From the NCBI RefSeq assembly GCF_020745735.1, contig NC_083409.1, positions 7,057,534 through 7,121,533 on the forward strand: a DNA stretch of 64,000 bases. Reading direction: 5' to 3'. Positions within the stretch are counted from its first letter, which is position 1, and each line of letters starts with the position of its first letter. Shown piece after piece: positions 10,620-43,995 of the stretch. A model generated the notes under the pieces. That model was given only the letters and a program-made list of their open reading frames with translations, made no database searches and was not told the DNA's origin. Made by a program: the position numbers and the translations under genes. Origin of the DNA: Hemiscyllium ocellatum (taxonomy: Eukaryota).

Positions 10620-11050
10620 TAAGCTGGGGGAGGTGCGAGCTCGGTTTCTCACAGTGCTGCTACTGCTGCTGCTGCTGCTGAGGTCAGTGAGATCAGAGAC
10701 TGGGACAGGGATCCAGAGCTCACATTTAACTCTGCCCATGTCCGTCACAGAGAGACTAGTAGGAGGTTACTCGCTGATTTCACTCCATGCTGCAGGAATG
10801 GGACCACAGGGTGCAAATGGACAGAGATCCTTCACAAGGGGAGTAAAACTTACTGACTTATATCTTGCTGCTTAAAGGCGCAATGAAACTGAAGAAATAC
10901 AGCTGGACACCCTGTTAGACACAGTGCTCCTCGTTCAACCATTTTATTCACTGCAGCTCCCCAATAACACCTTCAACAATTCAGCATTTGTGTTTTAGAA
11001 AGTGTGTTTCAGTATTGACAGGGTGAATAATGGAGGATTGAGGTTTACTT
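10620..11050 (-). promoter_or_regulatory. J-proximal J-C intron block of cluster 1; candidate intronic kappa enhancer
   Basis: Inverted homology to 43570-43995; shared CAGCTG (10900-10905), CAAATG/ATTTGCAC (10811-10819), RUNX TGTGGT (10803-10808) and CAGGAA. Confidence 0.45.
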
Positions 11051-11052
11051 AC

Positions 11053-11381
11053 TCAGTCAGAGCTTGGTTCTTTTACCAAACGTAAAAGGGTTGCTGTAAC
11101 CTTGCGTACAGTAATAGTCAGCGACATCCTCATTCTGAACGTTGCTGATTGTCAGGGTGAAACTGGCCCTGATCCACTGCCGGTGAATCGATCGGAGACT
11201 CCTGTGAATCGAGTTGCTGCATTGTAGATCAGGAGTGAGGGTTTCTGACCTTCTCGCCGCTGGTACCAGGAAAGCTCATTGCTAACAGATTGACTGGCCG
11301 TACAGGTGATGGTTGCACTCTGGCCCAGCCTCACTGACAGCACCGGGGGAGACTGGCTCATGGTGATGTCCCCACTGATAC
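11053..11381 (-). pseudogene. IGKV-IGKJ: Germline-joined Ig kappa (NS4-type) VJ exon, pseudogene
   Basis: Acceptor ttacccctcAG at 11383-11382. Reads (G)[71 protein letters not shown]; a 1-nt deletion at 11167/11166; then [36 protein letters not shown] and donor GTAAGT at 11052. No RSS between V and J. Confidence 0.93.
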
Positions 11382-11567
11382 CTGAGGGGTAAGAGAGAAA
11401 CACAATGAGGCCAGAACTGTCCCAGAAAGAGCCGGTCAAATGAGAGATTGTTGGAGACACCGAGCATTCCTCTGCTTTCCGCATTTTCCCTTCAATCACA
11501 AGTCAGTGGAATTGGAGTGAAATGGAGAGCAGCTAAAGATTCAAGGTGGAAGGAGAGAGATTTGTAC

Positions 11568-11616
11568 CTGTGACGCAGGATGCCAGGGGCCAGATCAGCT
11601 GGATGTGTGAAATCAT
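11568..11616 (-). CDS. IGKV: Ig kappa leader exon of cluster 1 (MISHIQLIWPLASCVT/G)
   Basis: ATG at 11616, 49-nt phase-1 exon, GT donor at 11567-11566; near-identical to the cluster 2 leader. Confidence 0.95.
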
Positions 11617-17900: not shown

Positions 17901-20505
17901 GAGGTGCTGCATTTTGGGAACTTATACACTTAATGGTAAGGTCCTAGCGAGTGTTGCTGAACAAAGCGACCTTGGAGTGCAGGGTCATGACTCCTTGAAA
18001 GTGGAGTTGCAGGTAGGTAGGATAGTGAAGAAGGCGTTTGGTATGCTTTCCTTTACTGGTCAGACTATTGAGTAAAGGTGTTGGGACGTCATTAGCGGCA
18101 TTGGTTAGGCATTTGTTGGAATATTGCATGCAATTCTTGTCTCCTTCCTATCGGAAAGATGAAACTTGAAAGGGTTCAGAAAAGATTTACAAGGATGTTG
18201 CCAGGGTTGGAGGATTTGAGCTATAGGGAGAGGCTGAAAGGCTGGGGCTGTTTTCCCTGGAGTGTCGGAGGCTGAGGGATGACCATATAGAGGTTTACAA
18301 AATTATGAGGGGCATGGATAGGATATATAGACAAAGTCTTTTCCCTTGGATCAGAGAGTCCAGAACTAGAGGGCATAGATTTAGGTTGAGAGGGGAAAGA
18401 TATAAAAGAGACCTAAGGGGCAACTTTTTCATGCAGAGGGTGGTATGTGTATGGAATGAGCTGCCAGAGGATGTGGTGGAGGCTGGTAAAATTGCAACAG
18501 AAAAGAGGCATTTGGATGGATATATGAATAGGAAGGGTTTGGAGGGATATGGTCCAGGTGCTTGCAGGTGGGACTAGATTGGGTTGGGATATCAGGTCGG
18601 CGTGGACAGGTTGGACCGAAGGGTCTGTTTCCATGCTATACATCTCTATGACTCTATGACTCTATCTGGCACTGGTTTAGAGGATTACAGAATGACTAGG
18701 AATGAACTCAGAAATGGAGGATGGAGCATGATAAAACCTTGGCGGGAAGGATTAGGGAAAACCCAAAGGCATTCTACATTTACATGATGAATATAAAAAT
18801 GACCAAAGAGAGGGTAGGGCTGATGAGGGGTAAAGGAGGGCACTCATGCCTGGAATTGGAAGAGGTAGGGGAGGCCCGAGTGAGTTTTCTTTTCCTTCAG
18901 TGTTCACGAGAGACAGGCTTTGTTTTAATAGTGAGAAAGCTGTGGGGAAGGTTAATAGGCTTGAACAGATTGATATTAAGAAATTGGATGTGCTGAAATT
19001 TCTGGGAAGCATCAAGATAGATAAATCTCTAGGACCAGACCAGATGTATCTAAGGTTACTACAGATAGCGAGGAATGAGATTGCTGCACCTCTGGCGGTG
19101 TTGTTCCTCTGTTCAAGAAGTGGAATAGGGAAACCCCTGGGAATTAGAAACCAGTCAATCTTTTGTCTGTGGTAAGAAAGGTACTGGTAAGGATTCTGAG
19201 AGATAGGATTTATGACTGGTTGGAAAAACATAGTTTGACTAAAGATAGTCAACATGGCTTTGTGAGGTACAGGTCATGGCTTACAAGCCTTGTTGATTTC
19301 TTTGAGCTATGACGAATCATTTTGATGAAGGTTGAGCAGTGGATGTGGTGTACATGGATTTCAGTAAGGCCTTTAATAAGGTTCTCCACAGTAGACTCAT
19401 TCATAAAGTTAGGAGTTATGGGATACAGGGAAATTTGGTTCTTTGGACACAGAATTGGCTGGCCAAAAGCAGACAGAGAGTGGCAGTGGATTGAATGCAT
19501 TCCACCTGGAGGTCGGTGACCAGTGGTGTTCCACAGGGATCTCTTCTTGGGTCTCTGCTCTTTTTAGTTTTTATAAATGATTTGGATGAAGAAGGGGAAG
19601 AGTGGGCTAGTAAGTTTGATGATGACGCAAAGGCCAGTGGTGTTGTAGACAGTATTGCGGGCTGTTTCAGGCGACAACAAGACATTGACAGGATGTCGAG
19701 CTGGGCTGAGAAGTGGCAGATGGAGTTCAACCTGAATAAATGTGAAGTGATTCTTTTTGGAATTTTGAATTTGAATGCTGAAGACAGGATATTTGGCAGT
19801 GTGGAATAGTGGAATCTTGGGGTTCACGTAGATAGATCCCTCAAAGTTGCCACCCAAGTTGATAGGGTTATTAAGAAGCCATTTGGTGTTTTGGCTTTAA
19901 TTAACAAGGGAATTGAGTTTAAGTGCTGCGAGGTTTTGCTGCAGCTCTGTAAAACCCGGATTGGACGACACTTCGAATATTGTATCCCGTTTTGGTTGCT
20001 TAATTATAACAAGGATGTTGATGCTTTAGAGACAATGCAGAGGACGTTAATCAGAATTCTGTCTGGATTGGAGAGCTTGTTTTATGAAGAGAGGTTAAGT
20101 GAGCTGGGATTTTTCACACTGTAGAGAAAAAGGAAGAAAGGTGACTTCATAGAGGTGTGTAATTTAATCAGAGGCATAGATAGAATAGATAGCCAGAGAT
20201 TTTTCCCCAGGGCAGAAATGGCTATCATGAGGGAACATAATTTACGGTGACTGGAGGAAGGTTTAGGGGAGATGTCAGAGGTAGGTTCTTTATTCGGAGA
20301 GTGGAATGTATGTGGAATACACTTACAGTGGTGGTCGTAGAGTCAGAGACATTAGGGACATTTAAGTGAATGCTGGAGAAGCACAAGAATGGTAGTAAAT
20401 TGAAGGGTGTGTAGGTTAGGTTGACCTTAGATTAAGATAAATGCTCAGCACAGTACCATGGGCTGAAGGGCCTGTACTGGACTGCACTGTTCTAAGTTCC
20501 ATGTT
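14940..20505 (+). mobile_element. Older CR1 element (ORF1 end, EN, RT, 3' end) interrupted by a younger nested CR1
   Basis: EN motifs at 15200-15780 (AITETW, MGDFNLPNIDW); sequence resumes after 18665; RT ORFs 19495 and 19891; 3' end near 20500. Confidence 0.8.
16083..18660 (+). mobile_element. Younger nested CR1 LINE, most of ORF2 (EN+RT), multiply interrupted
   Basis: ORFs 16027 (LGLYYRPPN...DHNSICF), 16647, 17175 (PGNYRLVRLISVVGK), 17637 (VTSGVPQGSVLGP...FADDTK) and 18305; ends in (GACTCTAT)n. Confidence 0.9.
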
Positions 20506-20889
20506 TTATGTTCGATGATCTAAAATGTCAATGGCTTCTACAGGCTCTAGCCTCACACACACACAGTGGGGAAATGGGTGAGGTAGGAATGTACTGTCGC
20601 ATTCCATGGACTGTGCCCCAACCTAAAGTATCCCTCAGGAGGGGACAGGGAATGTTCAGGGTCCTGAGCTCCATTTCCCAGCCCAGGCAGCTTATCTCCC
20701 AATGAATGAATGAGATGCCACTTTGGAGCCCAGTCTCATTCAGTGGCCCCATTCAGTGCAGTCTCATTCTGTGGCCCCAGGTCGATACGAAGGAATTAGT
20801 GATCAAGCTAAAAAGGAAAGATTAGTTGATTAGGGGGAGAGAGTGGGTCAATGGGACTAATTGGATCAGTCACAGGCACGATGAGCTGA

Positions 20890-21170
20890 ATAGCCTCCTC
20901 CTGTGCTGTCAGGTTCCAGGGAGTGCAGACCGTTCACAGTTTTCTCTCGTCTCAGTAACAAACGTCCAGCTGCCCCGAGCTCCTTCTTTCACTTCCTCTC
21001 TTGGTGAAGTTTCATCCTTGCGATCTGACAGTCTTTGCAGTTATTTTTTTACACTGGGGCTTTCTGCTGTGGTCAGAATCTCTAATAATAAGTGTCCAAT
21101 CAGTGACAATCACAGCAACTAAGAGCAGTCAGGACTGAGGAGCCAGGATCATTGTGAAACACATTAGGAA
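20890..21170 (-). promoter_or_regulatory. Conserved non-repeat block, copy 1, with EICE (TTTCACTTCC 20987-20996), E-box CAGCTG and CCAAT
   Basis: Inverted near-identical copy at 33480-33755; motif matches the PU.1/IRF composite consensus GGAAnnGAAA. Confidence 0.5.
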
Positions 21171-21720
21171 GATCAAAGACATCTTCTTCAGCTCCTAGTC
21201 CAAACTCCATCCCTCTCCCTGAGCACAGTCTGCTGCTCAACCAGACTCTTTCCAAGCTTGGCCTCATCTTTGAGGCTACTCTGAGCCCCACATCCTTCAC
21301 ATCACAAAGGTCAGCCACTGAAAATCTCAGCCATGTCATGGGAACTCCAAACATGACCATTCTGGTCTTGTCACAGAATCATAGAGGTTTAGAACGTGGA
21401 AACAGGCCCTTTGGCAAAACCTGTCCATGTCACCCAATTTTCACAATTAATCTAGTCCCATTTGCTCGCATTTGGTCCATATCCCTCCGTACTTATTCCA
21501 TCCATGTAACTGGCCCACATCACTGCCATCGCTCTAGCAAAACTTCAGCACATCCAAACTCTACTGACAGTATCTAAACTTGCACCAAGTCCTATTTCTC
21601 CATCCCCTTTCTGACCTGCAATGGTTTCTAGTCCGACAAAATCTCAATTTTCAAATTCTCATGCTTGTTCTCAAACCCCTCCTTATCCTTCACCCTCTCT
21701 GCCTCTGCGACCTCATCCGA
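21170..21720 (+). mobile_element. L2 LINE RT/3' fragment shared with 33050-33480 (interrupted by a short CR1 3' end)
   Basis: Translates like L2 RT C-terminus (SIPL..H.LLLNQTL..LG.IFE); shared TTTTCAAATTCTCAT. Confidence 0.65.
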
Positions 21721-21729
21721 GCTGCCTCA

Positions 21730-23420
21730 CTCAGTGTGGTCAGCATTTTTGGATAATGACTTTCCATTCATTCATCCAAATTATTGAGAAAAATCATGAA
21801 ATGCTGAGGTCCCAGCACAGAACCCCAAGGACACCACCATTCACATCTTGCTCATTGGAGGACACACATTATTCTTCCAATCTGTCTCCCAACTCCAAAC
21901 TACTTTCTGACCCAAGACAAATGATGTTCTCAAATCCCACATGTTTCCACATTGATGAACGGCATCTCAAACATGGAAGCATAGAAAGTAGGAGCAAAAG
22001 TAGGCCATTCAGCCATTCAAGCCTGCTCTACCATTCTATCTGACTATGGCTGATCATCCAAATCAGACCATGATTCTTGTTTTCTCCCCATACTCTTTGA
22101 TCCCTTTATTCCTAAGAACTATATCAAGCTCCTTTTTGAAAACAGTCAATATTTTGTGTCCAACCACTTTCTGTGACAGAAAATGTCACAGGCTTTCTAT
22201 TCTCTGGACAAACAAATGTCTCCTCACCTCGGTCCTAAATGGCCTTTTCTATTTCCTTGAACTCTAATCCCTGTTTCTGGACTCCCCAGTCATCAGGAAC
22301 ACCCTTCCTGAGTTTATCCTGTCTTGTTCTTTTAGGATTGTATAGGTTTCAATGAAATCTCATCAATCTTTGACATTCCAATGAATATAATACTTACCAA
22401 TCCAGTTTCTCCTCAGATCCAAGTGCTGTCTTCCCTGGAATCAGCCTGGTAAACCTTCGCTGCCCTCCCTCCACAGCCAGAACATCCTTCCTCAGATAAG
22501 GAAATTGAAACTGCACACAACAGAATCATAAAATTACACATTAGAGAAGAGGCCCTTCAGCCCATAAAATCTGTACCAGCCAAACTACACTAAACCTATT
22601 GCAGCCTCACTTTCCAACACAAGACCCACAGCCCAGAAAACTATGACATTTCAAGTGTTCATCCAAGTACATTCTAAAGGCTGTGAGGTTACCCATTTCA
22701 AAAAGCCAACCCAGGCAGTGTGTTCCAGAGCCCCACAACCCTCTGAGTGAAACTTTGCTTCATAAATCCCCTCTGAATCTCCTGCCTTTCATGTTGAATG
22801 TGTGCCAACTTGTTATTGACTGTTCAACTAAGAGAAAAACTGTTTTCTATTCATGTTGTCTATTCCCCTCGTTATCTTTTATCTCTCTGTCATGTCTCCC
22901 CTCAACCTTCTCTGCTCCAAAGCAGGAGATTATCCAGCCTCTCCTCATCGCTGAGATGCTCCATCCGAGGCAACTTCCTGGTCAATCTCCTGTGCACTCC
23001 CTCCAGTACATTCACATCCTTCTTATAGTGTGGTAACCACAACTGCACACAGCACTCCAGCTGTGACCAAAGCAAAAGTCTGTATAGCTCCAACATATCC
23101 ACAATGTTCTATGCCTGAAATGATAAAAGCAAGTGCCCTGTACACCTTCATAACTGTTCTATTGACATGTTATATCTTCTAAAGTTCGTCACCTCACATT
23201 TATCAGAGTTAAATTCCATCCGCCTCTGATCTTCCCACCTGACCAATCCAATTATAACATACTGCCATCTAAAACCTTCTTCTTCGCTGTCAACCGTCCA
23301 GCAATCTTCTTGTCATCTGCAAACTCTGTAATCAACAATCTCATCAACATTTTTTCCAAATATCAAAAAAGGGACTCAACACTGATCCCTGTGGTATCCC
23401 ACTGCACGCTGTACTGGGGT
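21730..23420 (-). mobile_element. CR1 fragments
   Basis: ORF 22902(-) LECCVQLWLPHYKKDVNVLEGVHRRLTR; CR1 3' ends at ~21990 and ~22520. Confidence 0.75.
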
Positions 23421-24162
23421 CACACAGACAACCGTCTGCCTCCACCCTCTTATCTCCTTTCACTGAGCCAATTTTGGATTAACTACTCCTGGTGTGATCT
23501 CACTCAAGCGCTGTACAATTGCAACAGCACATCCTTGCTCATGTACTCAAACCCTGTCACTATAAAAACTAACATACTATTTACCTTCTTCACTGCCTGC
23601 TGCTCCTACAGACTTACTGTCAGTGAGTGATGTACAAGGACGCCCAGATCTTATTGCACCTCTCCATTCCTGAGGAAGGGCATATGCCCGAACTGTCAAC
23701 CCTCCTGCTCCTGATCCGTTGTGCATTTCCAGTGCCACACTTTTTGACTCTTATACCACTTATATGTGACCTTATTGAGGGCCCAACTGGAGCACTGGTT
23801 CCAGTTTCAGTCTCCTTACGTTTAGAAGGATGGATTCACCTTGGAGGGAGCACAACAAAGATTTACGAGACTGATTCCAGGAATCAGGGGATTCTCCGAT
23901 GAGGAGAGTTGGAGTTGATTGGGGCATTATTTCCTGGAGTTTAGTGTAGCAGGCTGGAGGGTGTGAATGGCCTCATGCTGTTTCTATTCCTTCTGTTCTG
24001 ATGATGGTGTTGGTGTGTGTTGATGAGAAATGGGGTTCCTCTGTTGAAACTGCTCCTGATTTAATGATGGAGCTAGAAGCCAGGAGAAGCTGCAGAAGCT
24101 TCCGTTTCTAACCAGAAACTGCCCGCTCTGCCTCTTCGACACAATGTGCCCAGAACCAACAC

Positions 24163-24316
24163 CCAGTGCAGTCTCCAGCCAGTGTCCCATTCATCCAGTA
24201 CAGTCTCCAGCTCGAGAACCATTCATCCAGTGCAGTCTCCAGCCAGAGAAACATTCATCCAGTGCCGTCTCCAGCCGGTGTCCCATTCATCCAGTTCAGT
24301 GTCCAGCCAGTGCACC
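24163..24316 (+). repeat. 32-bp minisatellite (CCAGTGCAGTCTCCAGCCAGTGTCCCATTCAT), about 5 units
   Basis: Directly visible. Confidence 0.9.
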
Positions 24317-24539
24317 AATTCAACTCAGATACACATGTCCTTTAACACCACTACACTCAGAACTCTATCTCTCTCTCTCTTTTTCTCGGTGTGTTGCTCT
24401 CTGAGTTACATCCTACCCTCCAGTTGAACTGCTGGGTGTCCGATTTGAGCCAATTCCAGTGAATCCCATGAAGAATAATGACAGGTTATTCGGACTGGAC
24501 ATTTGATGATGTAAATGTGAACCATTGCAGAAAATACAT

Positions 24540-24670
24540 TACAGAAGAAGGGCTCATGCCCGAAACGTTGATTCTCCTGCTCCTTGGATGCTGCCTGACC
24601 TGCTGCGCTTTTCCAGCAAAACATTTTCAGCTCTGATCTCCAGAATCTGCAGTCCTCATTTTCTCCTAGA
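24540..24670 (+). mobile_element. Short Penelope pLTR-derived element with degenerate hammerhead core (similar copy at 23663-23745)
   Basis: CAGAAGA-AGGGCTCATGCCC-GAAACG...GGATGCTGCCTGACCTGCTGCGCTTTTCCAGCA matches the 3' end of the PLE at 36650-36747. Confidence 0.7.
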
Positions 24671-24904
24671 TGAGAAAGTGCAGTAGCAAAGCCCGTACCG
24701 GAGCATTATGTCAATCAACACAGAACCAATGAAAGCTTCAGTAAAAACGATTATTAATGTGATTTTCAAGGATGTGTCATTATTCTAGTTACAAACGTCT
24801 TTCCCAACGAAGGTCCATCCTGTTGAATATTAGATACAGCTGGGATATGCAGAAATGTTGGACAGATGGAGTGTAATGTGGGGTAGTGTGACATTCTTCA
24901 TTTT

Positions 24905-26700
24905 CACAATAATTATTCAAATGTAACTGGAGCATTCTTAAACTGAAATGGCATCACTCCCCATTGGTTTAATCCTGAAGGTGTGTTCATGTTGTCAGCG
25001 GTACTTGTCAATGTCCCTTTAATAAATCAATTTTACACAAGACTGATACACTATCAATCTTTCAATACAATCTTCTTATCTGAGAATAGGGAATGGATCA
25101 ATCTTTGTTACTGCATTCAGTTTCCTATAGTCTACACAGAATCTAATTGACCTGTCTAGTTTAGGGACCAATACCACAGGAAAACTCCAATTACTCTGAA
25201 AGTTTAATCAATTGATTCTCTATCATGTACTGAAGTTCCTTTGTTACGTTGACCTATTTCTCTGGGTTTAAGCAAAATGATTTTTTTATTGGGACTGAAT
25301 TATCTGCATCCACATCATGTCCAATTAATGTAATACAGCCAAATGTACTTTTAAAACCATGTATTGGAGAAGTATCAGTCCATGCAGGCCATCGAGTCAA
25401 CACTGTCATTCGATCACGGTTGATTTTTTTCTCACCCCCATTCTCTTCTGTTCTCTGCATTACCCTCCATCTCCTTACCAAGTAAGAACTTATCTATCTC
25501 ATTCTTAAATGCTCTTTATGACTCGGCCTCCATGGACCTCTGTGGCAGTGAGTTTCCCAGGTTCACCACTCACTTTCTGAAAAAAGTTTGGCTTTTCTCA
25601 GCTCTGAAGGGTCATCCCTTCAGTCTGCGGCTGTGGAAAGTATTCTCCACGAATCTCATTGATTAATACTTTAGTTCCGATTGAGTTCTCTAAAGGGAAA
25701 ATCAATTCTTTCTCCAGTAAAAGTGATTGCATTGTCCCGTATCTCACAGGTAGATTCTGGGTTTAGCTGACGAAAAAGGAGCCACCATTCCTTTTGATAA
25801 AAATCCTGTCCATCTCACAACTACTTAACAAACTCCTTTACTTCCTGACAGAATTCACCTCCGGTCTTTTTGTTATAATAACAGCTACAACCTGCTCCGT
25901 GGGATTATCTATCTGTGTTCCATTCTCTGACCCATTTTTACTAACTCGTGTAAGTCCCGTGGGTCTACCTCACAACTTCCAACATTCCAAACTCACGTGG
26001 CCCACCTTATTCCCAGAGCAACATTTAAGCTTCTGATCATCACTTCCACCCTCAGCAACTTCCTTCTTAATCTGAGAAGGAGTTCTCGGGATGTTCCCTC
26101 CTGTCCATTCTCTCCCCTGGCAGCCTGCCTTCCTCACACTCTGCCACATTTTAGTTTTCTCCCATTTCTGGGGCTGACAGAGAAAGGTTTCTGGATCAGT
26201 TATCGTTGTAGCTGCTTGTCGTGCCGTTGGTCTTTGGTCTTCGACAAGAATTTTGATTCTGGAAGGAAAGAAAGTCATAAATTCTTCTCAAAGAATAATT
26301 TCTCTGAGAGTATTGTAAGTACTCTCAGCCTTTATCGCTCTTATCCACTTGTCAGCATTATTTTGTTGAACTCTTCCAAACTCAGTAGCAGTTTGTCCAG
26401 ATTGTTTCCATAAGTTCTGTAACCTCTGTCTGTATGTTTCTGGGACCGACTCATGTGTGTTTAGAATAGCCCTTTTCCCCTCCCCATGATCTTGCGAATG
26501 TTCCTCAGACAAGGGTGGAGAAATCTCTTGTGCTTTGCCAGTTCATTTACTTTGCATGGGCAAGCTCCAGTCTGCTTTTGGCCACCTCACTTGTTTTGCT
26601 ATCTTCTTAAACAACATGGGGAATGCTTCCACGTCCTTCTCTTCAAATTTTGTCACAGGCTTCACTGTCTTCAACGTAGAGCCAGAGTTATGGAGTGATC
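24905..26700 (-). mobile_element. Ty3/Gypsy LTR retrotransposon remnant (Gmr1-like/SCAN-like gag, zinc knuckle remnant, RT), interrupted by a CR1 3' end at 25345-25660
   Basis: ORFs KFEEKDVEAFPMLFKKIAKQVRWP, HESVPETYRQRLQNL...LREIIL, KCCSGNKVGHVSLECWKL; decayed RT ..KIDLLKGH*QVPLT..MPFQFKNAPVTF on minus 24905-25340. Confidence 0.75.
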
Positions 26701-29330
26701 CAGCACAGAAACAGACCTTTCGGCTCACCATGTCTGTGCTGACCAATAAACACCAAACTGCACTAGTCCCATGAACATGCACTTGGTCCATAGCCAACTA
26801 TGCCCTGGCATTTTAAGTGCTTGTCCGGCTGCTTCTTAAATGTTGTGACAGTACCTGCCTTCACTACCCTCTCAGATTGCCAGTACCATATTTGTATCAT
26901 CTAGGTGAAAACATATTTGCTCAAATCCCTTCCAAACCACTTAATCTTCACCTTAATCTTATGCCTTCTGGTTTTAGATATGTCTTCCACAGGGTAAAGA
27001 ATCACGTAATCTACTTTGTAAATTTCATAAATTTTGTAAATTGCCTTTCATAATTTTGTGTACCTCAATCAGGTGTACCCCTCAACCTCCTCTACTCCAG
27101 GGAAAGCAAACCCAGCTGATCCAGTCTTTCTTTATAACTGAGACTTGCCATGCTAGGCAACATCCTGGTGTACCTCCTCTGGACCCTCTGCAGTGCAATC
27201 ATCTCCTTCTGATAGTGTGGTTACCAGAACTGCACACAGAACTCCAGCTGTGGCCTAATCAGGACTCTGTAAAGTAGCAACAAACTTCCTTGTTCCGATA
27301 TTCTACACCTAGCTGATCAAGTCATGCATCCCGTATGCCTTCTTCCCACCCTGTCTACCCGTGCTGTACACCTTCAGAAATCTATGGATTAGTACGCTCA
27401 GTTCCCTTTGATTCTCAGCACTCCCTAAGGACCTACCATTCATTGTGTATATCCTTCCCTTACTATGTCTCCAAACGTGCATCACCTCACATTTATCAGG
27501 ATTAAATTTCATCTGCCATTGCTGTGTTCAGGTTACCAGCTGAACAATATCAGGTTGCAGCCTGAAACCTTCCTCCTCATTATTAATAACACCAACAATT
27601 TCATGTCATCTGCAAATTTACAAATTATACCGTATACAATCACATCCAATGGTTCGTGTATACAGCAAACAACAAGAGTCCTAGCGTTGTTTCCTACGGT
27701 GCAACACTGGTCACAGGCCTCAAATTCTCCACCATCCCTCTTTGGCTCTCATTTGGAAGCTGGTTTTGGATCCTAACCTGCCTTCGATTCCAATGGGCTC
27801 TTAGACTTTGGGCCAGTCTTCCAAAGGCCTCACCGAAGTCCATATAAATACATCAACTTCACAACCCCATCAATATATTTATTCACCTTTTCAAAATACT
27901 CAATTAACATATTCAGACAGGATTGCCCTCTTACAAATAGGTGCTGGCATCCTTGTCTTTCCTACTGTCGGTTAATCCTGTTCCTCAGAATTGTTTCCAA
28001 TAATTTCCCTCCCACTGGTATCAGATGATTTGGTCCGTAATTTCCTGGCCTATCCCGGCCACTCTTCTTGAACAAAGGGCCATGTGAGCAATCCTCCAGT
28101 CACCTGACACTTCACCTGTGTCCAATAAAGATTGAATATCTCCCCCAGAGTTCCAGAAATCGCGTCCCTTGCCTCCCACAGCAGCCTGGGATACATTTCA
28201 TCAAGCTCTGGGCATTCACCCACCTTTATGCTCGCTAAAACATGCAATACTTCATTCTTATTCATCTTAACATGCTCTAGAACCTCTTTACCAGAAGTAC
28301 AATCTCCAGCTACAAAGTGTTTCTCTGTTGTGTACATTGGCTCCACACGATGTCCATTGGTCTCTAATAGATTCCATTATTTCCCTGGTCATCCTCTTAC
28401 CCTTAACAAACAGATAAAATTCTTTGGGTTTCTGCTTGATCCTATTTCACAAAGATATTTCATAGTCCCACTTTGCCCTCCTAATTTCCTTTTTAAGCAT
28501 CCCACCCAGTTCACTCTAATTCTGAAGGGTCTCCCCTGCTTTTAATTCTCTTTATGTGATATATGCTTCTTTCTTTTACTTTATGCAACCTCACTATCCC
28601 TTCACATCCAGGGGCCCCTGGGCTTGCTGTCCCTGCCCTTCACTCTGAGGGGAAAACGCTGTTCCTGAATTCTCACGATGCCACTTGTAAAAGACGCCCA
28701 CTTTCCAAATGTAGGCTGACCTGCAAGTAACTGCTCCTAGTCTATGTTTGCCAGATTCTGTTTAATGGCATTGAAATCGGCCTTTCCCCAATTAAGATAC
28801 TTAACTTGTGCACTGTCTTTATCCCTTTATATAATTACTTCGAAATTTACGGAGTTGTGGGCACTGTGCTTACCAACTGACACATCAACCACTTGACCAG
28901 CATCATTCGCTGAGATTAGGTCTAGTTCTGCCCCAACTCTACTGGGATTATCTACGAACTGGTACAAAAAGATCTCCTGGATGGACTTTAAAAATTCTGT
29001 CCTGTCTAATCTTTTCACACAAAGGCGATCGCAGTTAATGTTCACAAAGTTGAACTTCTCTCCTAATATAAAACTATTCCTCTCACACTCTCTGTGATTT
29101 GCCTGAATTTCTGCTCCTCTCTCTCCAACTGAATATTGGGGTCCTGTAGCATAATCCCAGCAAAGTGATGGCACCTGTATTATTTCTTAGATCAACCCAG
29201 ATGGCCTTATTTGAAGATTCTACTAAGACAATTTCCCTCATTCCTGCAGTGACGGTTTCCTTTCTAAATAATGCAATGGCCCCGCCTCCCTGTTGCATGC
29301 CCTCCATCCTGCCTGAAACTTCTCTACCCA
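26700..29330 (-). mobile_element. Long degenerate CR1 (EN to 3' end)
   Basis: Minus ORFs 27309 (KFNPDKCEVMH), 28050, 28827 and 29083 (GGGAIALF...LGLCYRTP). Confidence 0.85.
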
Positions 29331-29332
29331 GC

Positions 29333-29582
29333 TTTAAATTAAGGGGTGGTAGGTATAGGACAGATGTTAGGGGTAGATTCTTTACACAGCGGGTTGTGAG
29401 TTCATGGAATGCCCTGCCAGTAGCAGTGGTGAACTCTCCTTCTTTATGGTCATTTAAGCGGGCATTGGATAGGCTTTTGGAAGTTATTGGGCTAGTGTAG
29501 GTTAGGTAGGATTCGGTCGGCGCAACATCGAGGGCCGAAGGGCCTGTACTGCGCTGTATCTTTCTATGTTCTATGTTCTATG
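29333..29582 (+). mobile_element. Young 5'-truncated CR1 3' end with (TTCTATG)n tail
   Basis: FKLRGGRYRTDVRGRFFTQRVVSSWNALP followed by TTCTATGTTCTATGTTCTATG. Confidence 0.85.
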
Positions 29583-29615
29583 AATGTTATGTTGCAAGTC
29601 CTGTCCTTCTTACAA

Positions 29616-30192
29616 CTGTAAATGTGTTGCTGGTCAAAGCACAGCAGGCCAGGCAGCATCTCAGGAATAGAGAATTCGACGTTTCGAGCGTAAGCCCTTC
29701 ATCAGGAATAAGAGAGAGAGAGCCAAGCAGGCTAAGATAAAATGTAGGGAGGAGGGATTAGGGGGAGGGGCGATGGAGGTGGGATAGGTGGAAGGAGGTC
29801 AAGGTGAGGGTGATAGGCCGGAGTGGGGTGGGGGCGGAGAGGTCAGGAAGAGGATTGCAGGTTAGGAGGGCGGTGCTGAGTTGAGGGAACCGACTGAGAC
29901 AAGGTGGGGGGAGGGGAAATGAGGAAGCTGGAGAAATCTAAATTCATACCTTGTGGTTGGAGGGTTCCCAGGCGGAAGATGAGGCGCTCCTCCTCCAGCC
30001 GTCGTGTAGTTGTGTTCTGCCGGTGGAGGAGTCCAAGGACCTGCATGTCCTCGGTGGAGTGGGAGGGGGAGTTAAAGTGTTGAGCCACGGGGTGATTGGG
30101 TTGGTTGGTTCGGGCGGCCCAGAGGTGTTCTCTGAAGCGTTCCGCAAGTAAGCGGCCTGTCTCACCAATATAGAGGAGGCCACATCGGGTGC
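29616..30192 (-). mobile_element. 5'-truncated Penelope-like element, same family as 33996-36747 (GIY-YIG C-terminus + 3' pLTR)
   Basis: Near-identical reverse complement of 36170-36747 (AQHFNSPSHSTEDMQVLGLL...). Confidence 0.92.
29674..29709 (-). ncRNA. Minimal type I hammerhead ribozyme motif in PLE 3' pLTR
   Basis: Minus strand ATTC-CTGATGA-A-GGGC-TTAC-GCTC-GAAA-CG-TC-GAAT; complete conserved core with palindromic ACGU helix III. Confidence 0.75.
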
Positions 30193-30624
30193 CAAATCAA
30201 CTGGAATTGTTTGAGGATGTAAGGAATGGATTTAATAAGGTGAAGCTAGTAGTTTTTTGTTCTTAATTCATTCATGGGAAGAGGGTGTCGCTGGAGAGGC
30301 AGCACTTATTGCCCAGAGGGCAGTTCAAAAGTCAACCATGTTGTTGTGGGTCTGGAGTCACACGTTGTCCAGACCAGGTAAGGATGGCAGTTTCCTTCCC
30401 TAAAGGACATTAGTGAACCAGATGGGTTTTTCAAACAATCAACAGTGGATGCATGGTCATTATTTTATTATTAATTGTGGATTAATGTGCTTCATTTACA
30501 CTTTCAAAAGTCTTCTAGTAAATCCCACAAAAGAGGATAGCATATAAAATTAAGGCTCATGGGCTTGTGGGCAGTGTATTGACATGGATAGAGAACTGAT
30601 TGCAGACAGGAAACAAAGTCATGC

Positions 30625-31560
30625 AGTCATTGAGTCCTACAGCACGGAGACAGGCCCTTCGGCCTAAACTGGCGCACACCGACCAAAATGTCCGACCACA
30701 CTAACCCAATTTCCCTGCACTTGGTCCATATCCTTCTTAACGTTTTCCACCCATGTAATTGGCCAAATGCCTTTTAAATATTGTTAATGTACCTGCCTCA
30801 ATCACTTCTGCTGGCAGCTCATTCCATACGTGTACCACCCTCTGTGTAACAAAGTGCCCCTCAGGTTCCCTTCTATTCTTTCCCCTCTACCCTTAAACTG
30901 TTGCCCTCTCGTCCTTTATTTACAAACCCTCGGAAAAGGACTGCGTGCATTCACCCAATCCATGCCTCTCATGATCTGAGACACTGCTATAAGGTTCCCC
31001 CTCAGTATCCCATGCTCTAAAGATAAAGGACATAGCTTGTCCAACCTCTCCCTATAACTCAGACCCTTGAGTTCTGGCAACATTCTTGTAAATTTCTCCT
31101 ACACTCTTTCCAGTTTAATAACATCCTTCCTATAAGAAGGTGACCAAAATTGAACACAGTACTCCAAGTGTGGCCTCACCAACTTCCCAACTTCTCTCGT
31201 CAATGCCCAGACTGATGAAGGTCAGTGTGCCAAAAGCCTTCATCATTGTCCTGTCTAACAGTGACTCCACTTCCAGAGAACCATGCACCTGAACTCCAAG
31301 GACATTCTGCATCAATATACTCCTTCATGCCCTACCATTCACCATGAAACTCCTACCTAGATTTGACTTTCCAAAATGCAAGACCTCACGCTTATCTACA
31401 GTCAACTCCATTAGCCATTTTTCGGTCCACTTCCCCAGCTGATCGAAGTCCTGCTGCAATTTCTGATAACCTTCCTCACTGTCCACGATACCGCCTATTT
31501 TAGTGTGATTTGGAAATTTATGAATCAAGCCTTGTACACTCTCATCCAAATCATAGATGT
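30625..31560 (-). mobile_element. CR1 RT/3' fragment
   Basis: ORF 31325(-) DDLDESVQGLIHKFPNHTKIGG...WLMELTVDKREVLHFG. Confidence 0.85.
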
Positions 31561-33020
31561 AATGTAGGAATAAACAGGCCTTTTTCTGAAAGGGCTGAAT
31601 GAGCTCAGATCTGGACCACAGGCCTGGAGACCAATGATTCACGTGATATGTTAATGATTTAGATGATGGAATTAAGATTAATATCTCCAGGTTAGCGGAT
31701 GACACAAAGCTGGTTGAGAGGGGGAGTTGTGAGGAGGATGTAGAGATGCTTCTGTGTGATTTGAATGAATTGAGTTAGTCACAGATGATGTACAATGTGG
31801 ATTAAAGTGAAGTTACTCAGTTTAGAATCAAAAACAGGAATGCAGATTATTATCTGAATAGGGATAGACTGAGAATGGGAAAGTGCAATATACACCAGTC
31901 GCTAAATGTAAGCATTGCAGGAGCAGCAAGTAGTGAAGAAAGCCAATGGTATTTTGGTCCTTCATAGAGATAGGATTCAAGTACAGGAGCAGGGATGTCT
32001 TGCTGCAATTTTACAGGGCTCTAGTGAGGTCACACCTGGAGTATTCCATCAACATTTGGCTCAATGACAGGAGACAGAGGGTAGAGTGAGAAATGTGTTT
32101 GTGTGACTGGATCCAGTGTGCCGTGGGATACCACAGGGATCACTGCTGGGTCCCTTATTATTTGTCATACTTAGAAACAATGTGGATGAGAATGTGATGG
32201 TGTGGGAGGTTGAGTTAGCGAATGAAACTAAGTTTGTATATGACATGAAGATTGGTGGATGGTTAAAGTGAGGAAGAAGGTGTTATGTTACAGGATGATA
32301 TAAGTGAGTTGGTCAGATAGGCAGAGAAAAGGCAGATGGAAATTAACCCTGCTAAATGTGAGGTGAAGCACTTTGGAAGACACAGCCGGTTAACAGGGCG
32401 GGAATGAAGCCATATGGGACACTTCCCTTTCTCATTTCAAGGGTGGGTGATAAAAACAGGGAGGTTATGTTGGAATTGTTCAGAACTAAGGTGAGGTGAG
32501 AGCTGAAGTACTGTGTGCAGTCATGGTCACCACACTATAGGAATGATGTGATTACACTGGACAGAGTACAGATGAGATTAACCAGGAAGTTGCCTGGGAT
32601 GAAGCATTTCAATGATGAAGAGAGGCTGGATAAGCTCGAGTTGTTGTCTTTGTAGCAGAAAAGGTTGCTGGGGTCCCTGATAGAGATGTATAAAGTTATG
32701 AGGACATTGCACAGGAGGCAGAGAGTAAATAACATGGTGGCACACATTCATTGTGAAAAACAGGAGCTTCAGAGGTTATTTGAGGAGCATAATTTTCACT
32801 CAGAAGATGGTGAGGGTCTGCATGCATTGACTGGGAGGGTAGTTGCCGGAGGAAACTTCTTAACCTTTAAAATGTCCTTGTATGAACACTGAAATGTCAT
32901 AACATTCAAGGCTATGGGCCTAATGTTAGAAAGTGGGACTCGTTTAAGTTTAGTGTTGTTTGGCTGGTACAGGATCAATGGGCTGAAGGGCCTCTTCTGT
33001 ACAGTGTGATTTTAAGACTC
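31560..33020 (+). mobile_element. CR1 RT/3' fragments
   Basis: GTGGGATACCACAGGGATCACTGCTGGGTCCC (GIPQGSLLGP) and CR1 3' end at ~33000. Confidence 0.75.
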
Positions 33021-33049
33021 TATTCTGTGCAATTTTGGGCTTCTTATCA

Positions 33050-33480
33050 GAGGAAGGATATTCGGGCTGTGAAGGGAGGGCAAGGAGGGGACAAGGATGA
33101 GAATTTGAAAAATAAAGCACTGCTAGACCGGGAGCCAATGTAGGTCAGTGACCATGGCGAAGGGGGGGAGGGGGGGCGGGGATCGGGCGGGTGGGGCTTG
33201 GTGCGAGTTTGGATATGGGCAGCAGAGTTTGGGATGAGCTGACATTTGCAGAGTGTGGTGGCTCTGATGTAGTCCAGGATAACATTGGAATGGTCACTTT
33301 TGGAGACCCAACAACATGGCTGAGATTTTCAGTGGCTGATCTTTGTGATGTGGGGGACATGGGGTTCAGATCAGCCTCAAAGATGATGCCAAGGTTGGAA
33401 AGAGTCTGGTTGAGCAGCAGACAGTGCTCAGTGAGAGGGATGGAGTTTGTACTGGGATCTGAAGAGGATGGCTGTGACCT
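33050..33480 (-). mobile_element. L2 LINE fragment, paralogous to 21170-21720
   Basis: ORF 33145(-) NSIPLTEHCLLLNQTLSNLGIIFE; inverted homology to 21170-21720. Confidence 0.65.
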
Positions 33481-33755
33481 TCCCAATGTGTTTCACAGTG
33501 AGCCTGGCTCCTCAGTCCTGACTGCTCTTAGCTGCTGTGATGGTCACTGATTGGACACTTATTATTAGAGATTCTGACCACAGCAGAATGCCCCAGTGTA
33601 AAAAATAACCGCAAAGATTGTCAGATCGCAAGGTTGAAACTTCACCAAGAGAGGAAGTGAAAGAAGGAGCTCGGAGCAACTGGACGTTTGTTACTGAGAC
33701 TGGAGAAAACTGTGAACTGTCTGCACTCCCTGGAATCTAACAGCACAGGAGGCTG
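33480..33755 (+). promoter_or_regulatory. Conserved non-repeat block, copy 2, with EICE GGAAGTGAAA (33653-33662), E-box CAACTG and ATTGG
   Basis: About a dozen mismatches over ~215 bp versus copy 1 (by eye). Confidence 0.5.
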
Positions 33756-34010
33756 GTTCTGGGATTTTTTTTGCAGAAACAGCATAATGATGGAAACAGG
33801 ATCAGTCACTCTCTCACAAACACAGACGCCTGCACTCGGAGATCAGAAACAGAATCCAGCAGCAGCTGTCTCCAAGTTGTGAAACCTGCACAGAATTGTT
33901 CCCTTATTCTGTTTTTAACTGGAAGGATAGACCAAGCAGGGGAGGCAACACAGTGGTGTGTACGGTCGGACGGGAGTTGCCCTGGAGTGCTCACCGAGTA
34001 ACCCTAACCC

Positions 34011-34172
34011 CCACGTCGAGCAACGTCACCACGTCCCCCCACGTCGAGCAACGTCACCACGTCCCCCCACGTCGAGCAACGTCACCACGTCACGCATGAC
34101 CCCGCCCCCACGTCAAGCAACGTCACCACGTCACGCATGACCCCGCCCCCACGTCGAGCAACGTCACCACGT
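34011..34172 (+). repeat. CpG-rich tandem repeat at PLE 5' end (core CCACGTCGAGCAACGTCACCACGTC; 5 units of about 27-41 bp)
   Basis: Directly visible. Confidence 0.9.
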
Positions 34173-41224: not shown

Positions 41225-41236
41225 CTGTGAGACTGA

Positions 41237-42522: not shown

Positions 42523-42571
42523 ATGATTTCACACATCCAGCTGATCTGGCCCCTGGCATTCTGTGTCGCAG
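42523..42571 (+). CDS. IGKV: Ig kappa leader exon of cluster 2 (MISHIQLIWPLAFCVA/G)
   Basis: ATG 42523, 49-nt phase-1 exon, GT donor at 42572. Confidence 0.95.
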
Positions 42572-42757
42572 GTACAAATCTCTTTCCTTCAACATTGAAT
42601 TTTTAGCTGCTCTCCATTTCACTCCAATTTCACTGACTTGTGATTGAAGGGAAAATGCTGAAACCAGAGGAATGCTCAGAGTCTCCAACAATCTCTCATT
42701 TGACCGTCTCTTTCTGTGACAGTTCTGACTTCACTGTGTTTCTTTCTGACCCTTCAG

Positions 42758-43057
42758 GTATCAGTGGGGATATCATCATGACTCGGTCTATCCAGGTGCT
42801 GTCAGTGGGACTGGGCCAGATCGCAACCATCACCTGTACGGACAGTCATAGCATTAGCAGCTACCTCAGCTTGGTACCAGCAGCGAGAAGGTCAGAAACC
42901 CTCTCTCCTGATCTATGCTGCAACAAATCAATTCACAGGAGTCTCCGAGTGATTCACCGGCAGTGGATCAGGGCCCAATTACACCCTGACAATCAGCAAC
43001 GTTCAGAATGAGCATGTCACTGACTGTTAGTGTCAGCAGCATTACAGCTACACTCTA
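42758..43057 (+). pseudogene. IGKV: Unrearranged Ig kappa V segment (NS4-type), pseudogene
   Basis: Acceptor AG 42756-42757. DIIMTRSIQVLSVGLGQIATITCTDSHSISSYL; +1 frameshift before the conserved Trp (~42870); [26 protein letters not shown](42950, CGA>TGA)[25 protein letters not shown](43028)CQQHYSYTL. Confidence 0.93.
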
Positions 43058-43085
43058 CACAGTGATACAGAGCCATACAAAAAGC
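43058..43085 (+). promoter_or_regulatory. 12-bp spacer recombination signal sequence of V
   Basis: CACAGTG-atacagagccat(12)-ACAAAAAGC. Confidence 0.97.
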
Positions 43086-43492
43086 TTAAGGCACACAAAA
43101 CCACCTCCTGAACTGACACATCCACGGTTATATAAAACGGAAAATAATGGACACACAGTCCCACCGCCTGAACTGACATATCCCACAGTTAGATCTAAAT
43201 GAAACTGAACAAATTACCCCATGCTGGGATTGTCAGTGTCCCCTACACACTCCAGTCCCTGTGGTGTCCACCTCTCACTGAAGGCCTCAAGTTTCCCCCT
43301 CACGCTCCATGGCCACATGTGAAGAGCAGCTGCAAGATTTAACAACGAAAAATAAAGTTCACAACCCAGAGGCAGAGACAGAAAGACATACAAATGAGTG
43401 AGAGACTGATAGTGACACAAAGAGGGTGAGAATGACCGACAGACCATGAAATAGGGAGCGGTTGAGAGTGATGGATGGAAGCAGAGAGCTGA

Positions 43493-43531
43493 GGTTTTTG
43501 TACAGCCTCTGCACTGGGAGCTCTCACTGTG
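43493..43531 (-). promoter_or_regulatory. 23-bp spacer recombination signal sequence of J
   Basis: GGTTTTTGT-acagcctctgcactgggagctct(23)-CACTGTG, perfect consensus. Confidence 0.97.
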
Positions 43532-43566
43532 GCTTAGGTTTGGTAAAGGAAGCAAGCTCAGACTAA
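43532..43566 (+). CDS. IGKJ: Ig kappa J segment, open (LRFGKGSKLRL/S)
   Basis: FGXG motif; donor GTAAGT at 43567. Confidence 0.95.
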
Positions 43567-43569
43567 GTA

Positions 43570-43995
43570 AGTAAACCTCAATTCTCCGTTATTAAGCTTG
43601 CAACACTGAAACTTTCCAAATCACGAATGCTGAATTGTTGAAGGTGTTAGTGGGGAGGTGCAGTGAATGAAATGGTTGATTGAGGAGCATTGTGTCGAAC
43701 AGGGTGTCCAGCTGAATTTCTTTAGTTCCATTGCCCCCTTGAAGCAGCGAGATATAAGTCAGTCAGTTTTACTCACCGTGTGGAGGAGTTCTGGCCATTT
43801 GCAGCCTGTGGTCCCATTCCTGCAGCATGGAGTGAAATCAATGAGTAGCCTCCTGTCAGTCTCAGTGTGAAGGACATGGGCAGAGTTTGATGTGAGCTCT
43901 GGCTTCCTGTTCCAGTCTCTGATCTCACTGACCTCAGCAGCAGCAGCAGCATCACAGTGAGACATCGAGCTCCCACCTCCCCCAGCTTTAACTCT
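43570..43995 (+). promoter_or_regulatory. J-proximal J-C intron block of cluster 2; candidate intronic kappa enhancer
   Basis: CAGCTG 43709-43714, CATTTG/ATTTGCAG 43796-43804, TGTGGT 43807-43812, TTCCTG 43817-43822; all shared with cluster 1. Confidence 0.45.

What the first reader, a model, noticed from the sequence alone, without database searches (positions are those of the whole stretch)
20890..33755. Duplicated upstream block with a perfect PU.1/IRF composite element: candidate shark kappa enhancer
Seen: a ~270-bp non-TE block occurs at 20890-21170 and inverted at 33480-33755. The copies lie ~9.4 kb and ~8.9 kb upstream of the two V leaders, despite largely different TE content in between. 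Both keep AGAGGAAGTGAAAG exactly, plus an E-box ~15 bp away (CAGCTG/CAACTG) and a CCAAT-like ATTGG. By eye the block has about a dozen mismatches in ~215 bp, apparently fewer than the adjacent shared L2 fragment or the V exons. Known: GGAAnnGAAA (EICE) bound by PU.1-IRF4/8 is the key site of the mammalian Ig kappa 3' and lambda enhancers. Inference: a per-cluster B-cell enhancer, which to my knowledge has not been described for shark kappa clusters.
Basis: partly seen in the sequence, partly recalled or inferred. Interest (0 to 1): 0.72.

Follow-up and report, generated by a model that had tools for sequence, protein, structure and literature searches.

The report
Conserved upstream module of shark kappa clusters
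A roughly 350-base non-coding block lies a few kilobases upstream of shark kappa light-chain V genes, is kept as well as the V promoter in three shark species, and carries binding-site types known from mammalian and bird light-chain enhancers, so it is a credible but untested candidate enhancer; the two copies in this window sit next to dead genes.

Summary
The two inverted copies are real: 20897-21362 and 33288-33752, 466 bp, 91% identical, with sharp borders. AGAGGAAGTGAAAG is exact in both. They lie 9.3 and 8.8 kb upstream of two head-to-head kappa-type V leaders.

I fetched other shark kappa loci. The block is present, in the same orientation and 2.4-6.4 kb upstream of V, in Chiloscyllium punctatum (two loci, three copies) and Stegostoma tigrinum. 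A profile of the core finds only these six copies in about 186 kb, so it is not a dispersed repeat.

In a conservation profile of the cluster unit, the core (33500-33700) scores 0.93-0.94. That equals the V promoter/leader and exceeds the V exon body (0.76-0.85) and the syntenic flank (0.68-0.81). The PU.1/IRF-type site is exact in 5 of 6 copies and lies at a fixed distance from CAGCTG. RUNX and MEF2 consensus sites lie nearby.

No activity, binding or transcription data exist. Both V units here are pseudogenes with no C exon in the window, copy 1 carries about twice as many private changes, and one C. punctatum locus lacks the block.

The scan found this module before on other DNA of this genome (s1-228462, s1-216793, s1-216798). 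I found no published shark Ig enhancer in the held library.

The parts
20897..21362 (-). Block copy 1, full shared segment. The strand that points towards its V gene is the minus strand. Its V-proximal edge is 20897.
   Evidence: blastn self-comparison 90.8% over 466 bp; alignment A1
20902..21251 (-). Conserved core of copy 1, about 350 bp, the part shared at 88-94% with other species' clusters
   Evidence: 93.4% to C. punctatum L001 3268-3615; profile HMM hit 21250-20897, E = 3e-124
20986..20999 (-). AGAGGAAGTGAAAG, containing the Ets-IRF composite element GGAAGTGAAA (20987-20996), in copy 1
   Evidence: exact match; among the four best-conserved 14-mers of the core in six copies
20967..20972 (.). 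E-box CAGCTG of copy 1, 14 bp from the EICE 10-mer, with no indel between them in any of six copies
21068..21100 (+). RUNX/CBF consensus TGTGGT (21068-21073), MEF2 consensus CTAATAATAA (21082-21091) and CCAAT (21096-21100) in copy 1
   Evidence: motif scan; the stretch AGAGATTCTGACCA is nearly invariant in six copies
33288..33752 (+). Block copy 2, full shared segment. Its V-proximal edge is 33752.
33399..33747 (+). Conserved core of copy 2
   Evidence: 94.3% to L001 and 87.5% (blastn; 90.6% without gaps) to Stegostoma L004 7295-7634; conservation profile 0.93-0.94 at 33500-33700
33650..33663 (+). AGAGGAAGTGAAAG (EICE) in copy 2. The neighbouring E-box is degenerate here (CAACTG at 33677-33682).
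33550..33582 (+). ATTGG (33550-33554), MEF2 consensus (33559-33568) and RUNX site ACCACA (33577-33582) in copy 2
11048..11616 (-). Kappa-type V unit 1: leader 11616-11566, then a germline-joined VJ exon 11385-11048 with a frameshift after GSGSG and a TGA in the J part (pseudogene)
   Evidence: translations; tblastn with shark kappa chains
42523..43570 (+). Kappa-type V unit 2: leader 42523-42573; V exon from 42754 with a frameshift and two stops (pseudogene); RSS12 at 43058-43085; J RSS23 at 43493-43531; J at about 43532-43570
22461..23634 (-). Far-distal flank of copy 1, syntenic with 31891-33082 and with L001/L004, only 71-78% alike. Used as the local yardstick of drift.
31891..33082 (+). 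Far-distal flank of copy 2 (partner of 22461-23634)

Best explanation
The block is a selectively maintained cis-regulatory module that belongs to the kappa-type light-chain cluster unit of these sharks. It is most likely a lymphoid (B-cell) enhancer.

Proposed mechanism (inferred). A Spi-family Ets factor (PU.1/Spi-B type) and IRF4/8 bind the composite site GGAAGTGAAA. An E protein binds CAGCTG 14 bp away. RUNX/CBF and MEF2-type factors bind about 70-95 bp further out. The assembled complex then opens and activates the V promoter 2-9 kb downstream. It may also mark the cluster for rearrangement and hypermutation.

Shown here: the sequence, its linkage to V, its orientation and its conservation.
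Inferred: factor binding and enhancer activity.

The two copies in this window flank two dead V units, so they are probably relics. Copy 1 is already decaying.
For: Linkage to V:
- The block lies upstream of V in the same orientation in window units 1 and 2 (9.3 and 8.8 kb), C. punctatum L001 (6.4 kb), Stegostoma L004 (2.4 kb) and C. punctatum L005 (4.7 kb). L005 also has a head-to-head partner copy.
- The distance varies through TE insertions while the orientation and the sequence are kept.

Not a dispersed repeat:
- A profile HMM of the core finds only these six copies in about 186 kb.
- Summed contig depth over the block is about 2000-4800, against about 13 for the single-copy flank and about 100,000 for a true TE next to it. 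That suggests a copy number of order 10^2, as expected for one block per cluster in a large array.

Constraint:
- The conservation profile of the unit has three peaks: block core 0.93-0.94, V promoter/leader/intron 0.91-0.95 and a J-C intron piece 0.91-0.92. The V exon body scores 0.76-0.85 and the syntenic far flank 0.68-0.81.
- The same core-above-flank pattern is seen within the window and across two other species.

Motifs:
- The EICE is exact in 5 of 6 copies, including one that is only 76% alike overall. Its spacing to CAGCTG is invariant.
- GGAAnnGAAA is the EICE consensus (PMC4334403). [quoted passage not shown]
- The 10-mer equals the lambdaB probe core (PMC4872103).
- Lambda enhancers of human, mouse and chicken share E-box, MEF2 and PU.1-IRF4 sites. 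The chicken 3'Core has a putative CBF site (PMC3972084).

Other readings tested: no conserved ORF and no Rfam family.
Against: - There are no functional data of any kind. No run on record as RNA holds the block, and contigs cannot show transcription.
- Both V units here are pseudogenes, and no C exon is found in the window.
- Against the divergent L005 pair the core (76-78%) is no better kept than the V region (78-80%) or the near flank (74-81%). The two L005 copies are only 67.5% alike. Constraint is therefore not uniform, and gene conversion may add to the similarity in the closer group.
- C. punctatum L006, colinear with unit 2, shows no block within 14.2 kb upstream of its leader, though that stretch has 0.97 kb of N.
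- The motif combination was defined after seeing the sequence. GGAANNGAAA alone occurs 9 times in the window.
- No clear NF-kB site or octamer is present in the block.
Confidence: 0.55

Rival explanations
1. The block is a promoter (possibly bidirectional in head-to-head pairs) for a non-coding germline transcript that runs into the cluster. It is not a distal enhancer.
For: The block has CCAAT and an AT-rich TATA-like stretch close together. PU.1-type sites are common in TATA-less lymphoid and myeloid promoters (general knowledge). The blocks face each other between divergent clusters in the window and in L005.
Against: CCAAT and the AT-rich stretch are only about 8 bp apart, which does not fit promoter geometry. 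No conserved downstream exon or splice donor was seen. The distance to V varies from 2.4 to 9.3 kb through TE insertions. No RNA evidence exists either way.
Confidence: 0.13
2. The block is a cis-element of another kind tied to Ig biology, for example a hypermutation-targeting (DIVAC-like) element or a recombination-accessibility or boundary element, without classical enhancer activity.
For: E-box, MEF2 and PU.1-IRF4 motifs are the ones needed for DIVAC function of Ig enhancers (PMC3972084). The block is linked to clusters and conserved.
Against: In the known cases these functions reside in enhancers themselves (PMC3972084), so this is more a refinement than a separate class. No CTCF-type core was seen by eye in the block.
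Confidence: 0.12
3. The block has no function. Its similarity reflects gene conversion or recent co-duplication among cluster units, and the motifs are chance.
For: Window copies 1 and 2 are 93% alike, although their V-proximal flanks are of two different old types that are shared with the L005 pair. That suggests homogenisation. Against L005 the core is not better kept than V. Both window units are dead.
Against: The core-above-flank pattern recurs between species, where conversion cannot act: window against Stegostoma is 88-91% in the core and 72-76% in the far flank. The EICE and its spacing to the E-box survive in a copy that is 76% alike overall. The chance of keeping a given 14-mer at that identity is about 0.76^14 = 2%.
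Confidence: 0.12
4. The block is a fragment of a transposable element or another dispersed repeat unrelated to Ig loci.
For: It abuts TE ends on both sides, and its last 25 bp or so resemble the head of a common shark repeat. It is multi-copy in the reads.
Against: The profile HMM finds it only upstream of kappa V genes in 186 kb. Depth is 20-50 times lower than for the adjacent true TE. Position and orientation relative to V are fixed in three species.
Confidence: 0.03

Closest known systems
Ig lambda enhancers of mouse (E-lambda 2-4/3-1), human and chicken (cIg-lambda-E)
   Same: Both have a PU.1-IRF composite site, and the 10-mer GGAAGTGAAA is identical to the lambdaB probe core (PMC4872103). 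Both have a MEF2 consensus upstream of it, an E-box downstream of it, and compact size (a few hundred bp). Both are linked in cis to a light-chain gene (PMC3972084).
   Different: The known enhancers lie 3' of C, whereas this block lies 2-9 kb upstream of V, once per V-J-C cluster. No clear NF-kB site is present (only a kB-like GGGGCTTTCT). Spacings differ. Sequence homology to the mammalian or chicken enhancers was not tested, because no such sequence was available from a tool. Activity is unknown.
Mouse Ig kappa 3' enhancer (PU.1 / NF-EM5 = IRF4 site)
   Same: Both have an EICE plus an E-box in a kappa-type light-chain locus. SPI1/IRF4 at this enhancer facilitates light-chain recombination (PMC13757776; PMC3972084, Fig. 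S5 legend).
   Different: The mouse enhancer sits 3' of C and serves a single large translocon locus. The shark element is upstream and repeated with each small cluster.
Chicken Ig lambda 3'Core DIVAC element
   Same: Both combine an E-box with putative CBF (RUNX) and PU.1 motifs (PMC3972084).
   Different: The chicken element was defined by a hypermutation-targeting assay. Nothing comparable has been tested for the shark block.
The same module noted elsewhere in this genome by the scan (s1-228462, s1-216793, s1-216798)
   Same: All describe an EICE plus E-box (plus RUNX or kB-like) block of about 280-350 bp a few kb upstream of kappa V.
   Different: Those copies lie about 5 kb upstream of V. 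The clusters noted in s1-228462 belong to a pair that s1-228448 describes as intact. The copies here lie 9 kb upstream of two pseudogene units. I could not compare the sequences directly.

Membership tests
Ig light-chain lymphoid enhancers with an Ets-IRF composite element | Contains an EICE (5'-GGAAnnGAAA-3') | tested here: met
   GGAAGTGAAA is exact in both window copies and in 5 of 6 copies overall. Consensus from PMC4334403.
Ig light-chain lymphoid enhancers with an Ets-IRF composite element | Partner motifs of the lambda and kappa 3' enhancers (E-box, MEF2, NF-kB) | tested here: inconclusive
   CAGCTG is present in 5 of 6 copies at fixed spacing. The MEF2 consensus YTAWWWWTAR is present in the four closer copies. 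NF-kB is only a kB-like site with a mismatch. A RUNX site is present. The motifs were chosen after seeing the sequence.
Ig light-chain lymphoid enhancers with an Ets-IRF composite element | Linked in cis to a light-chain gene and conserved above its surroundings | tested here: met
   The block is upstream of V in 5 of 6 clusters in three species. Core scores 0.93-0.94 against flank 0.68-0.81.
Ig light-chain lymphoid enhancers with an Ets-IRF composite element | Bound by PU.1/Spi-B with IRF4/8 in B cells | not testable with these tools
   Needs EMSA or ChIP/CUT&Tag with shark factors.
Ig light-chain lymphoid enhancers with an Ets-IRF composite element | Raises transcription of a linked promoter in B cells, independent of distance and orientation | not testable with these tools
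   There is only indirect support: the distance to V varies from 2.4 to 9.3 kb with the sequence kept.
Ig light-chain lymphoid enhancers with an Ets-IRF composite element | Sequence homology to a known mammalian or bird enhancer beyond short motifs | not tested
   No mammalian or chicken enhancer sequence was available from a tool. Only the 23-nt lambdaB probe in PMC4872103 could be compared, and it shares the 10-mer.
Transposable element / dispersed repeat | Copies scattered in unrelated genomic contexts | tested here: not met
   nhmmer with the core profile finds only the six V-linked copies in 186 kb. Depth is far below that of the neighbouring TE.
Transposable element / dispersed repeat | TE hallmarks (coding capacity, terminal repeats) | tested here: not met
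   All six reading frames carry 2-15 stops in every copy. No terminal repeats were seen in the alignments.
Structured non-coding RNA gene | Match to a described RNA family | tested here: not met
   cmscan of 20600-21500 against Rfam 15 gave no match at E up to 1.
Promoter of a transcript | Transcription start sites in or next to the element | not testable with these tools
   No run on record as RNA holds the block, and the runs laid were contigs.

The most novel reading that the evidence does not exclude
The block is the working per-cluster enhancer of shark kappa genes and uses the same MEF2 / PU.1-IRF / E-box grammar as the lambda enhancers of birds and mammals. If so, this grammar predates the split of cartilaginous and bony vertebrates and was originally placed upstream of V. 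In head-to-head cluster pairs the two facing copies would form a shared central control region. That arrangement could bear on how one of some hundred clusters is chosen per B cell.
Probability: 0.35. Interest if true: 0.78.

Novelty: new variant of a known kind. Interest (0 to 1): 0.6.

Why it matters
I found no enhancer described for any cartilaginous-fish immunoglobulin gene in the held literature. How a shark B cell activates only a few of its many small Ig clusters is an open question; PMC2435157 proposes infrequent formation of a promoter-enhancer complex.

A defined 350-bp element with a testable PU.1/IRF site, present once per cluster, would make that question experimentally approachable. 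It would also date the light-chain enhancer motif set to the base of jawed vertebrates.

This window adds four points:
- The module is also kept next to dead clusters.
- The distance to V can stretch to 9 kb.
- The module is shared with Stegostoma and with a divergent C. punctatum subfamily.
- It is one of only three conservation peaks of the unit.

Tried and rejected
Steps that gave nothing:
- Five of the look-ups for chromosome-scale shark assemblies returned gene positions but no DNA, because the file was too large: new C. punctatum, Hemiscyllium, Scyliorhinus torazame, Cetorhinus and Heterodontus. The older S. torazame assembly failed the same way. Conservation outside Orectolobiformes could therefore not be tested.
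- The third protein search added only one usable locus, L006. It has no block within 14.2 kb upstream of its leader, with 0.97 kb of N. I count this as one negative.
- L002 and L003 have only 2.1-2.7 kb upstream of V and are uninformative.
- No run on record as RNA holds the block. The runs guessed to be RNA hold parts of it at depths like DNA. All runs laid were contigs, so nothing can be said about expression.
- Depth ratios from contigs are only a rough guide to copy number, as the tool warns.
- The look-up of earlier findings by sequence was blank.

Readings rejected:
- Coding exon: stops in all frames in all copies.
- Known RNA family.
- Dispersed TE.
- A C exon in the window: tblastn with three shark kappa chains found none.

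The third near-match to the 14-mer, at 9421, lies in a stretch that matches other places in the window (8772-9494 against 20274-19527). It is unrelated to the block.


Full report
**1. The observation**

A blastn self-comparison shows that the shared segment is longer than stated. It runs 20897-21362 on the plus strand against 33752-33288 on the minus strand, 466 bp at 90.8% identity. Both borders are sharp in the alignment.

AGAGGAAGTGAAAG is exact at 20986-20999 (-) and 33650-33663 (+). The only other near match in the window (9421, one mismatch) lies in a stretch that matches other places in the window. The E-box is CAGCTG in copy 1 and CAACTG in copy 2, 14 bp from the GGAAGTGAAA 10-mer. 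ATTGG/CCAAT is present in both.

**2. The setting**

The window holds two head-to-head kappa-type V units.

- Unit 1 (minus strand): leader at 11616-11566 and a germline-joined VJ exon at 11385-11048. It has a frameshift after GSGSG and a TGA in the J part.
- Unit 2 (plus strand): leader at 42523-42573, a V exon from 42754 with a frameshift and two stops, an RSS12 at 43058, and a J with an RSS23 at 43493-43531.

tblastn with three shark kappa chains finds no C exon anywhere in the window. Both units are therefore pseudogenes here. The block edges lie 9,281 and 8,771 bp from the leader ATGs. An N run at 40862-41034 was left alone.

**3. Is the block better kept than its neighbours inside the window?**

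Copy 1 against copy 2:

| Segment | Identity | Fisher p against core |
|---|---|---|
| Core 20902-21251 | 92.8% | - |
| 20975-21117 | 96.5% | - |
| Adjacent shared piece 21252-21362 | 84.7% | 0.02 |
| V region | 87.0% | 0.007 |
| J region | 82.1% | 1e-6 |
| Syntenic far flank 22461-23634 / 31891-33082 | 71.0% | 2e-19 |

**4. Other clusters and species**

The V ORF finds Chiloscyllium punctatum proteins at 74-85% identity. A second search finds kappa light-chain models in several sharks. DNA could be fetched for four C. punctatum contigs and one Stegostoma tigrinum locus, and later for one more C. punctatum locus. The larger assemblies returned no DNA.

The block is present, on the same strand as V, at these places:

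- L001 3268-3615, with the leader at 10001; 94.3% to copy 2.
- Stegostoma L004 7295-7634, with the leader at 10001 and the C exon at 17485-17781; 87.5% by blastn, 90.6% without gaps.
- L005 4839-5296, with the leader at 10001; about 76%.
- L005 1561-991, a second copy facing away from the first; about 76%.

L005 belongs to a more divergent kappa subfamily. Distances from block to leader are therefore 2.4, 4.7, 6.4, 8.8 and 9.3 kb. The differences are due to repeats inserted in between.

A profile HMM built from the six cores finds only those six copies in the window plus all loci, about 186 kb. L006 is colinear with unit 2 from 33866 onward. It has no block within 14.2 kb upstream of its leader, but that stretch includes 0.97 kb of N and a repeat insertion exactly where homology stops.

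**5. Copy number**

Only contigs could be laid on 20500-21800. In the window's own species (organism A) the summed depth is about 2000-4800 over the block. It is about 13 over the apparently single-copy flank 20500-20631 and about 100,000 over the repeat at 21424-21511. Many distinct contigs cover each variable position. The tool warns that this is not a copy number.

Contigs of three other coded organisms carry the block at about 90% identity. One 785-bp contig also carries the same upstream flank.

At a dozen positions copy 1 differs from nearly all other copies. Counting private changes among the four closer copies gives 13 for copy 1, 6 for copy 2, 7 for L001 and 30 for Stegostoma.

**6. 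Conservation profile of the unit**

I slid 100-bp windows along unit 2 (31800-45000) and averaged identity to unit 1, L001 and L004. Three peaks appear:

- the block core at 33500-33700: 0.93-0.94;
- the V promoter, leader and leader intron at 42400-42700: 0.91-0.95;
- a piece of the J-C intron at 43750-43950: 0.91-0.92.

The V exon body scores 0.76-0.85 and the syntenic far flank 0.68-0.81. The core-above-flank pattern holds between species, where gene conversion cannot act.

Against the divergent L005 pair the core (76-78%) is about level with the V region (78-80%). The two L005 copies are only 67.5% alike. Constraint is therefore real but not uniform.

**7. What is conserved inside the core**

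In the six-copy alignment the best-kept 14-mers are:

- GAGAAAACTGTGAA;
- GTTTGTTACTGAGA;
- AGAGATTCTGACCA, which runs into the RUNX site ACCACA;
- AGAGGAAGTGAAAG, the EICE.

The EICE is exact in five copies; the sixth has GGAAATGAAG. CAGCTG is kept in five. No copy has an indel between the two sites. A MEF2 consensus (CTAATAATAA) and CCAAT lie next to the RUNX site in the four closer copies.

GGAANNGAAA alone occurs 9 times in the window. The four-motif combination within 350 bp occurs only at block copies. This test was devised after seeing the sequence.

There is no conserved reading frame and no Rfam match.

**8. Comparison with what is known**

- GGAAnnGAAA is the Ets-IRF composite element (PMC4334403).
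- The lambdaB probe GCGAATAAAAGGAAGTGAAACCG contains the same 10-mer (PMC4872103).
- Human, mouse and chicken lambda enhancers share E-box, NF-kB, MEF2 and PU.1-IRF4 sites, with a further E-box downstream in mammals. The chicken 3'Core has E-box, putative CBF and PU.1 motifs. These motifs are needed for targeting hypermutation (PMC3972084).

The shark block thus works like, or at least looks like, that class. It differs by lying upstream of V, by being repeated once per cluster, and by lacking a clear NF-kB site. Membership cannot be settled without binding and activity data.

Searches of the held library found no described enhancer of a cartilaginous-fish Ig gene. PMC2435157 only postulates a promoter-enhancer complex.

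**9. Verdict**

The block is a real, cluster-linked, conserved non-coding module. I put about 0.85 on that much and 0.55 on the specific reading as a B-cell enhancer acting through the EICE.

Rival readings are an upstream promoter, another Ig-related cis-element, a functionless product of homogenisation, and (nearly excluded) a repeat fragment.

The two copies in this window belong to dead units, and copy 1 shows signs of decay.

The scan had already noted the same module on other DNA of this genome (s1-228462, s1-216793, s1-216798). I treated those notes as leads. The cross-species and profile tests reported here are my own.

Noticed in passing
window 20670-20897 and 33752-33974 (plus 36758-37471); L005 4838-5510 and 1571-41: The V-proximal flanks of the two window copies are of two different types. 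Each type is shared with one member of the head-to-head pair in C. punctatum L005: copy 1 with L005a, copy 2 with L005b. So the head-to-head pair itself looks like an old duplication unit. Yet the two window cores are 93% alike while the two L005 cores are 67.5% alike, which hints at homogenisation within some pairs.
   Followed up: partly
window 43750-43950 (and 10640-10880 in unit 1): A third conservation peak of the unit (0.91-0.92) lies in the J-C intron, 200-400 bp behind J. It coincides with an antisense ORF with a leucine-run, signal-peptide-like start (10633-10875 +, 43773-44009 -).
   Followed up: partly
window 40258-40542: A 285-bp piece about 2 kb upstream of the unit 2 leader is 88% alike (up to 0.92 per 100 bp) with L001 8367-8651. 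It is also found in L002, L003, L005 and L006 but is absent from unit 1. It may be a second conserved upstream element or a shared old repeat.
   Followed up: no
window 29613-30192 and 36171-36750: These are two 580-bp inverted copies, 98% identical. The stretch 33995-36750 has no colinear counterpart in C. punctatum L006 (only a reversed repeat match at 7783-8318), so it looks like a later insertion that pushed block 2 away from its V.
   Followed up: partly
window 49165-58829: A large inverted-repeat structure, with arms 85-98% alike, containing 16-bp tandem arrays at 52288-52632 and 56933-57460. It lies where the C exon of unit 2 would be expected by colinearity with L006.
   Followed up: no
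window 1755-2803: A 33-bp tandem repeat array of about 1 kb.
   Followed up: no
window 1-496: This stretch matches the far-distal flank of the block units: 69% to 32560-32048, and 75-77% to 23003-23282 in direct orientation. It could be the edge of a further unit to the left of the window or a lone repeat copy.
   Followed up: no
proteins P0006, P0115, P0118: Three entries labelled Salmonella enterica or Aeromonas veronii are 74-84% identical to shark kappa V or C domains and sit on contigs of 299-990 bp. They are most likely fish or shark DNA contaminating bacterial assemblies.
   Followed up: no
L001 3034-3267: A 235-bp short repeat is inserted in C. punctatum exactly at the junction between the well-kept core and the less well-kept distal part of the block. 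The core stays intact.
   Followed up: no
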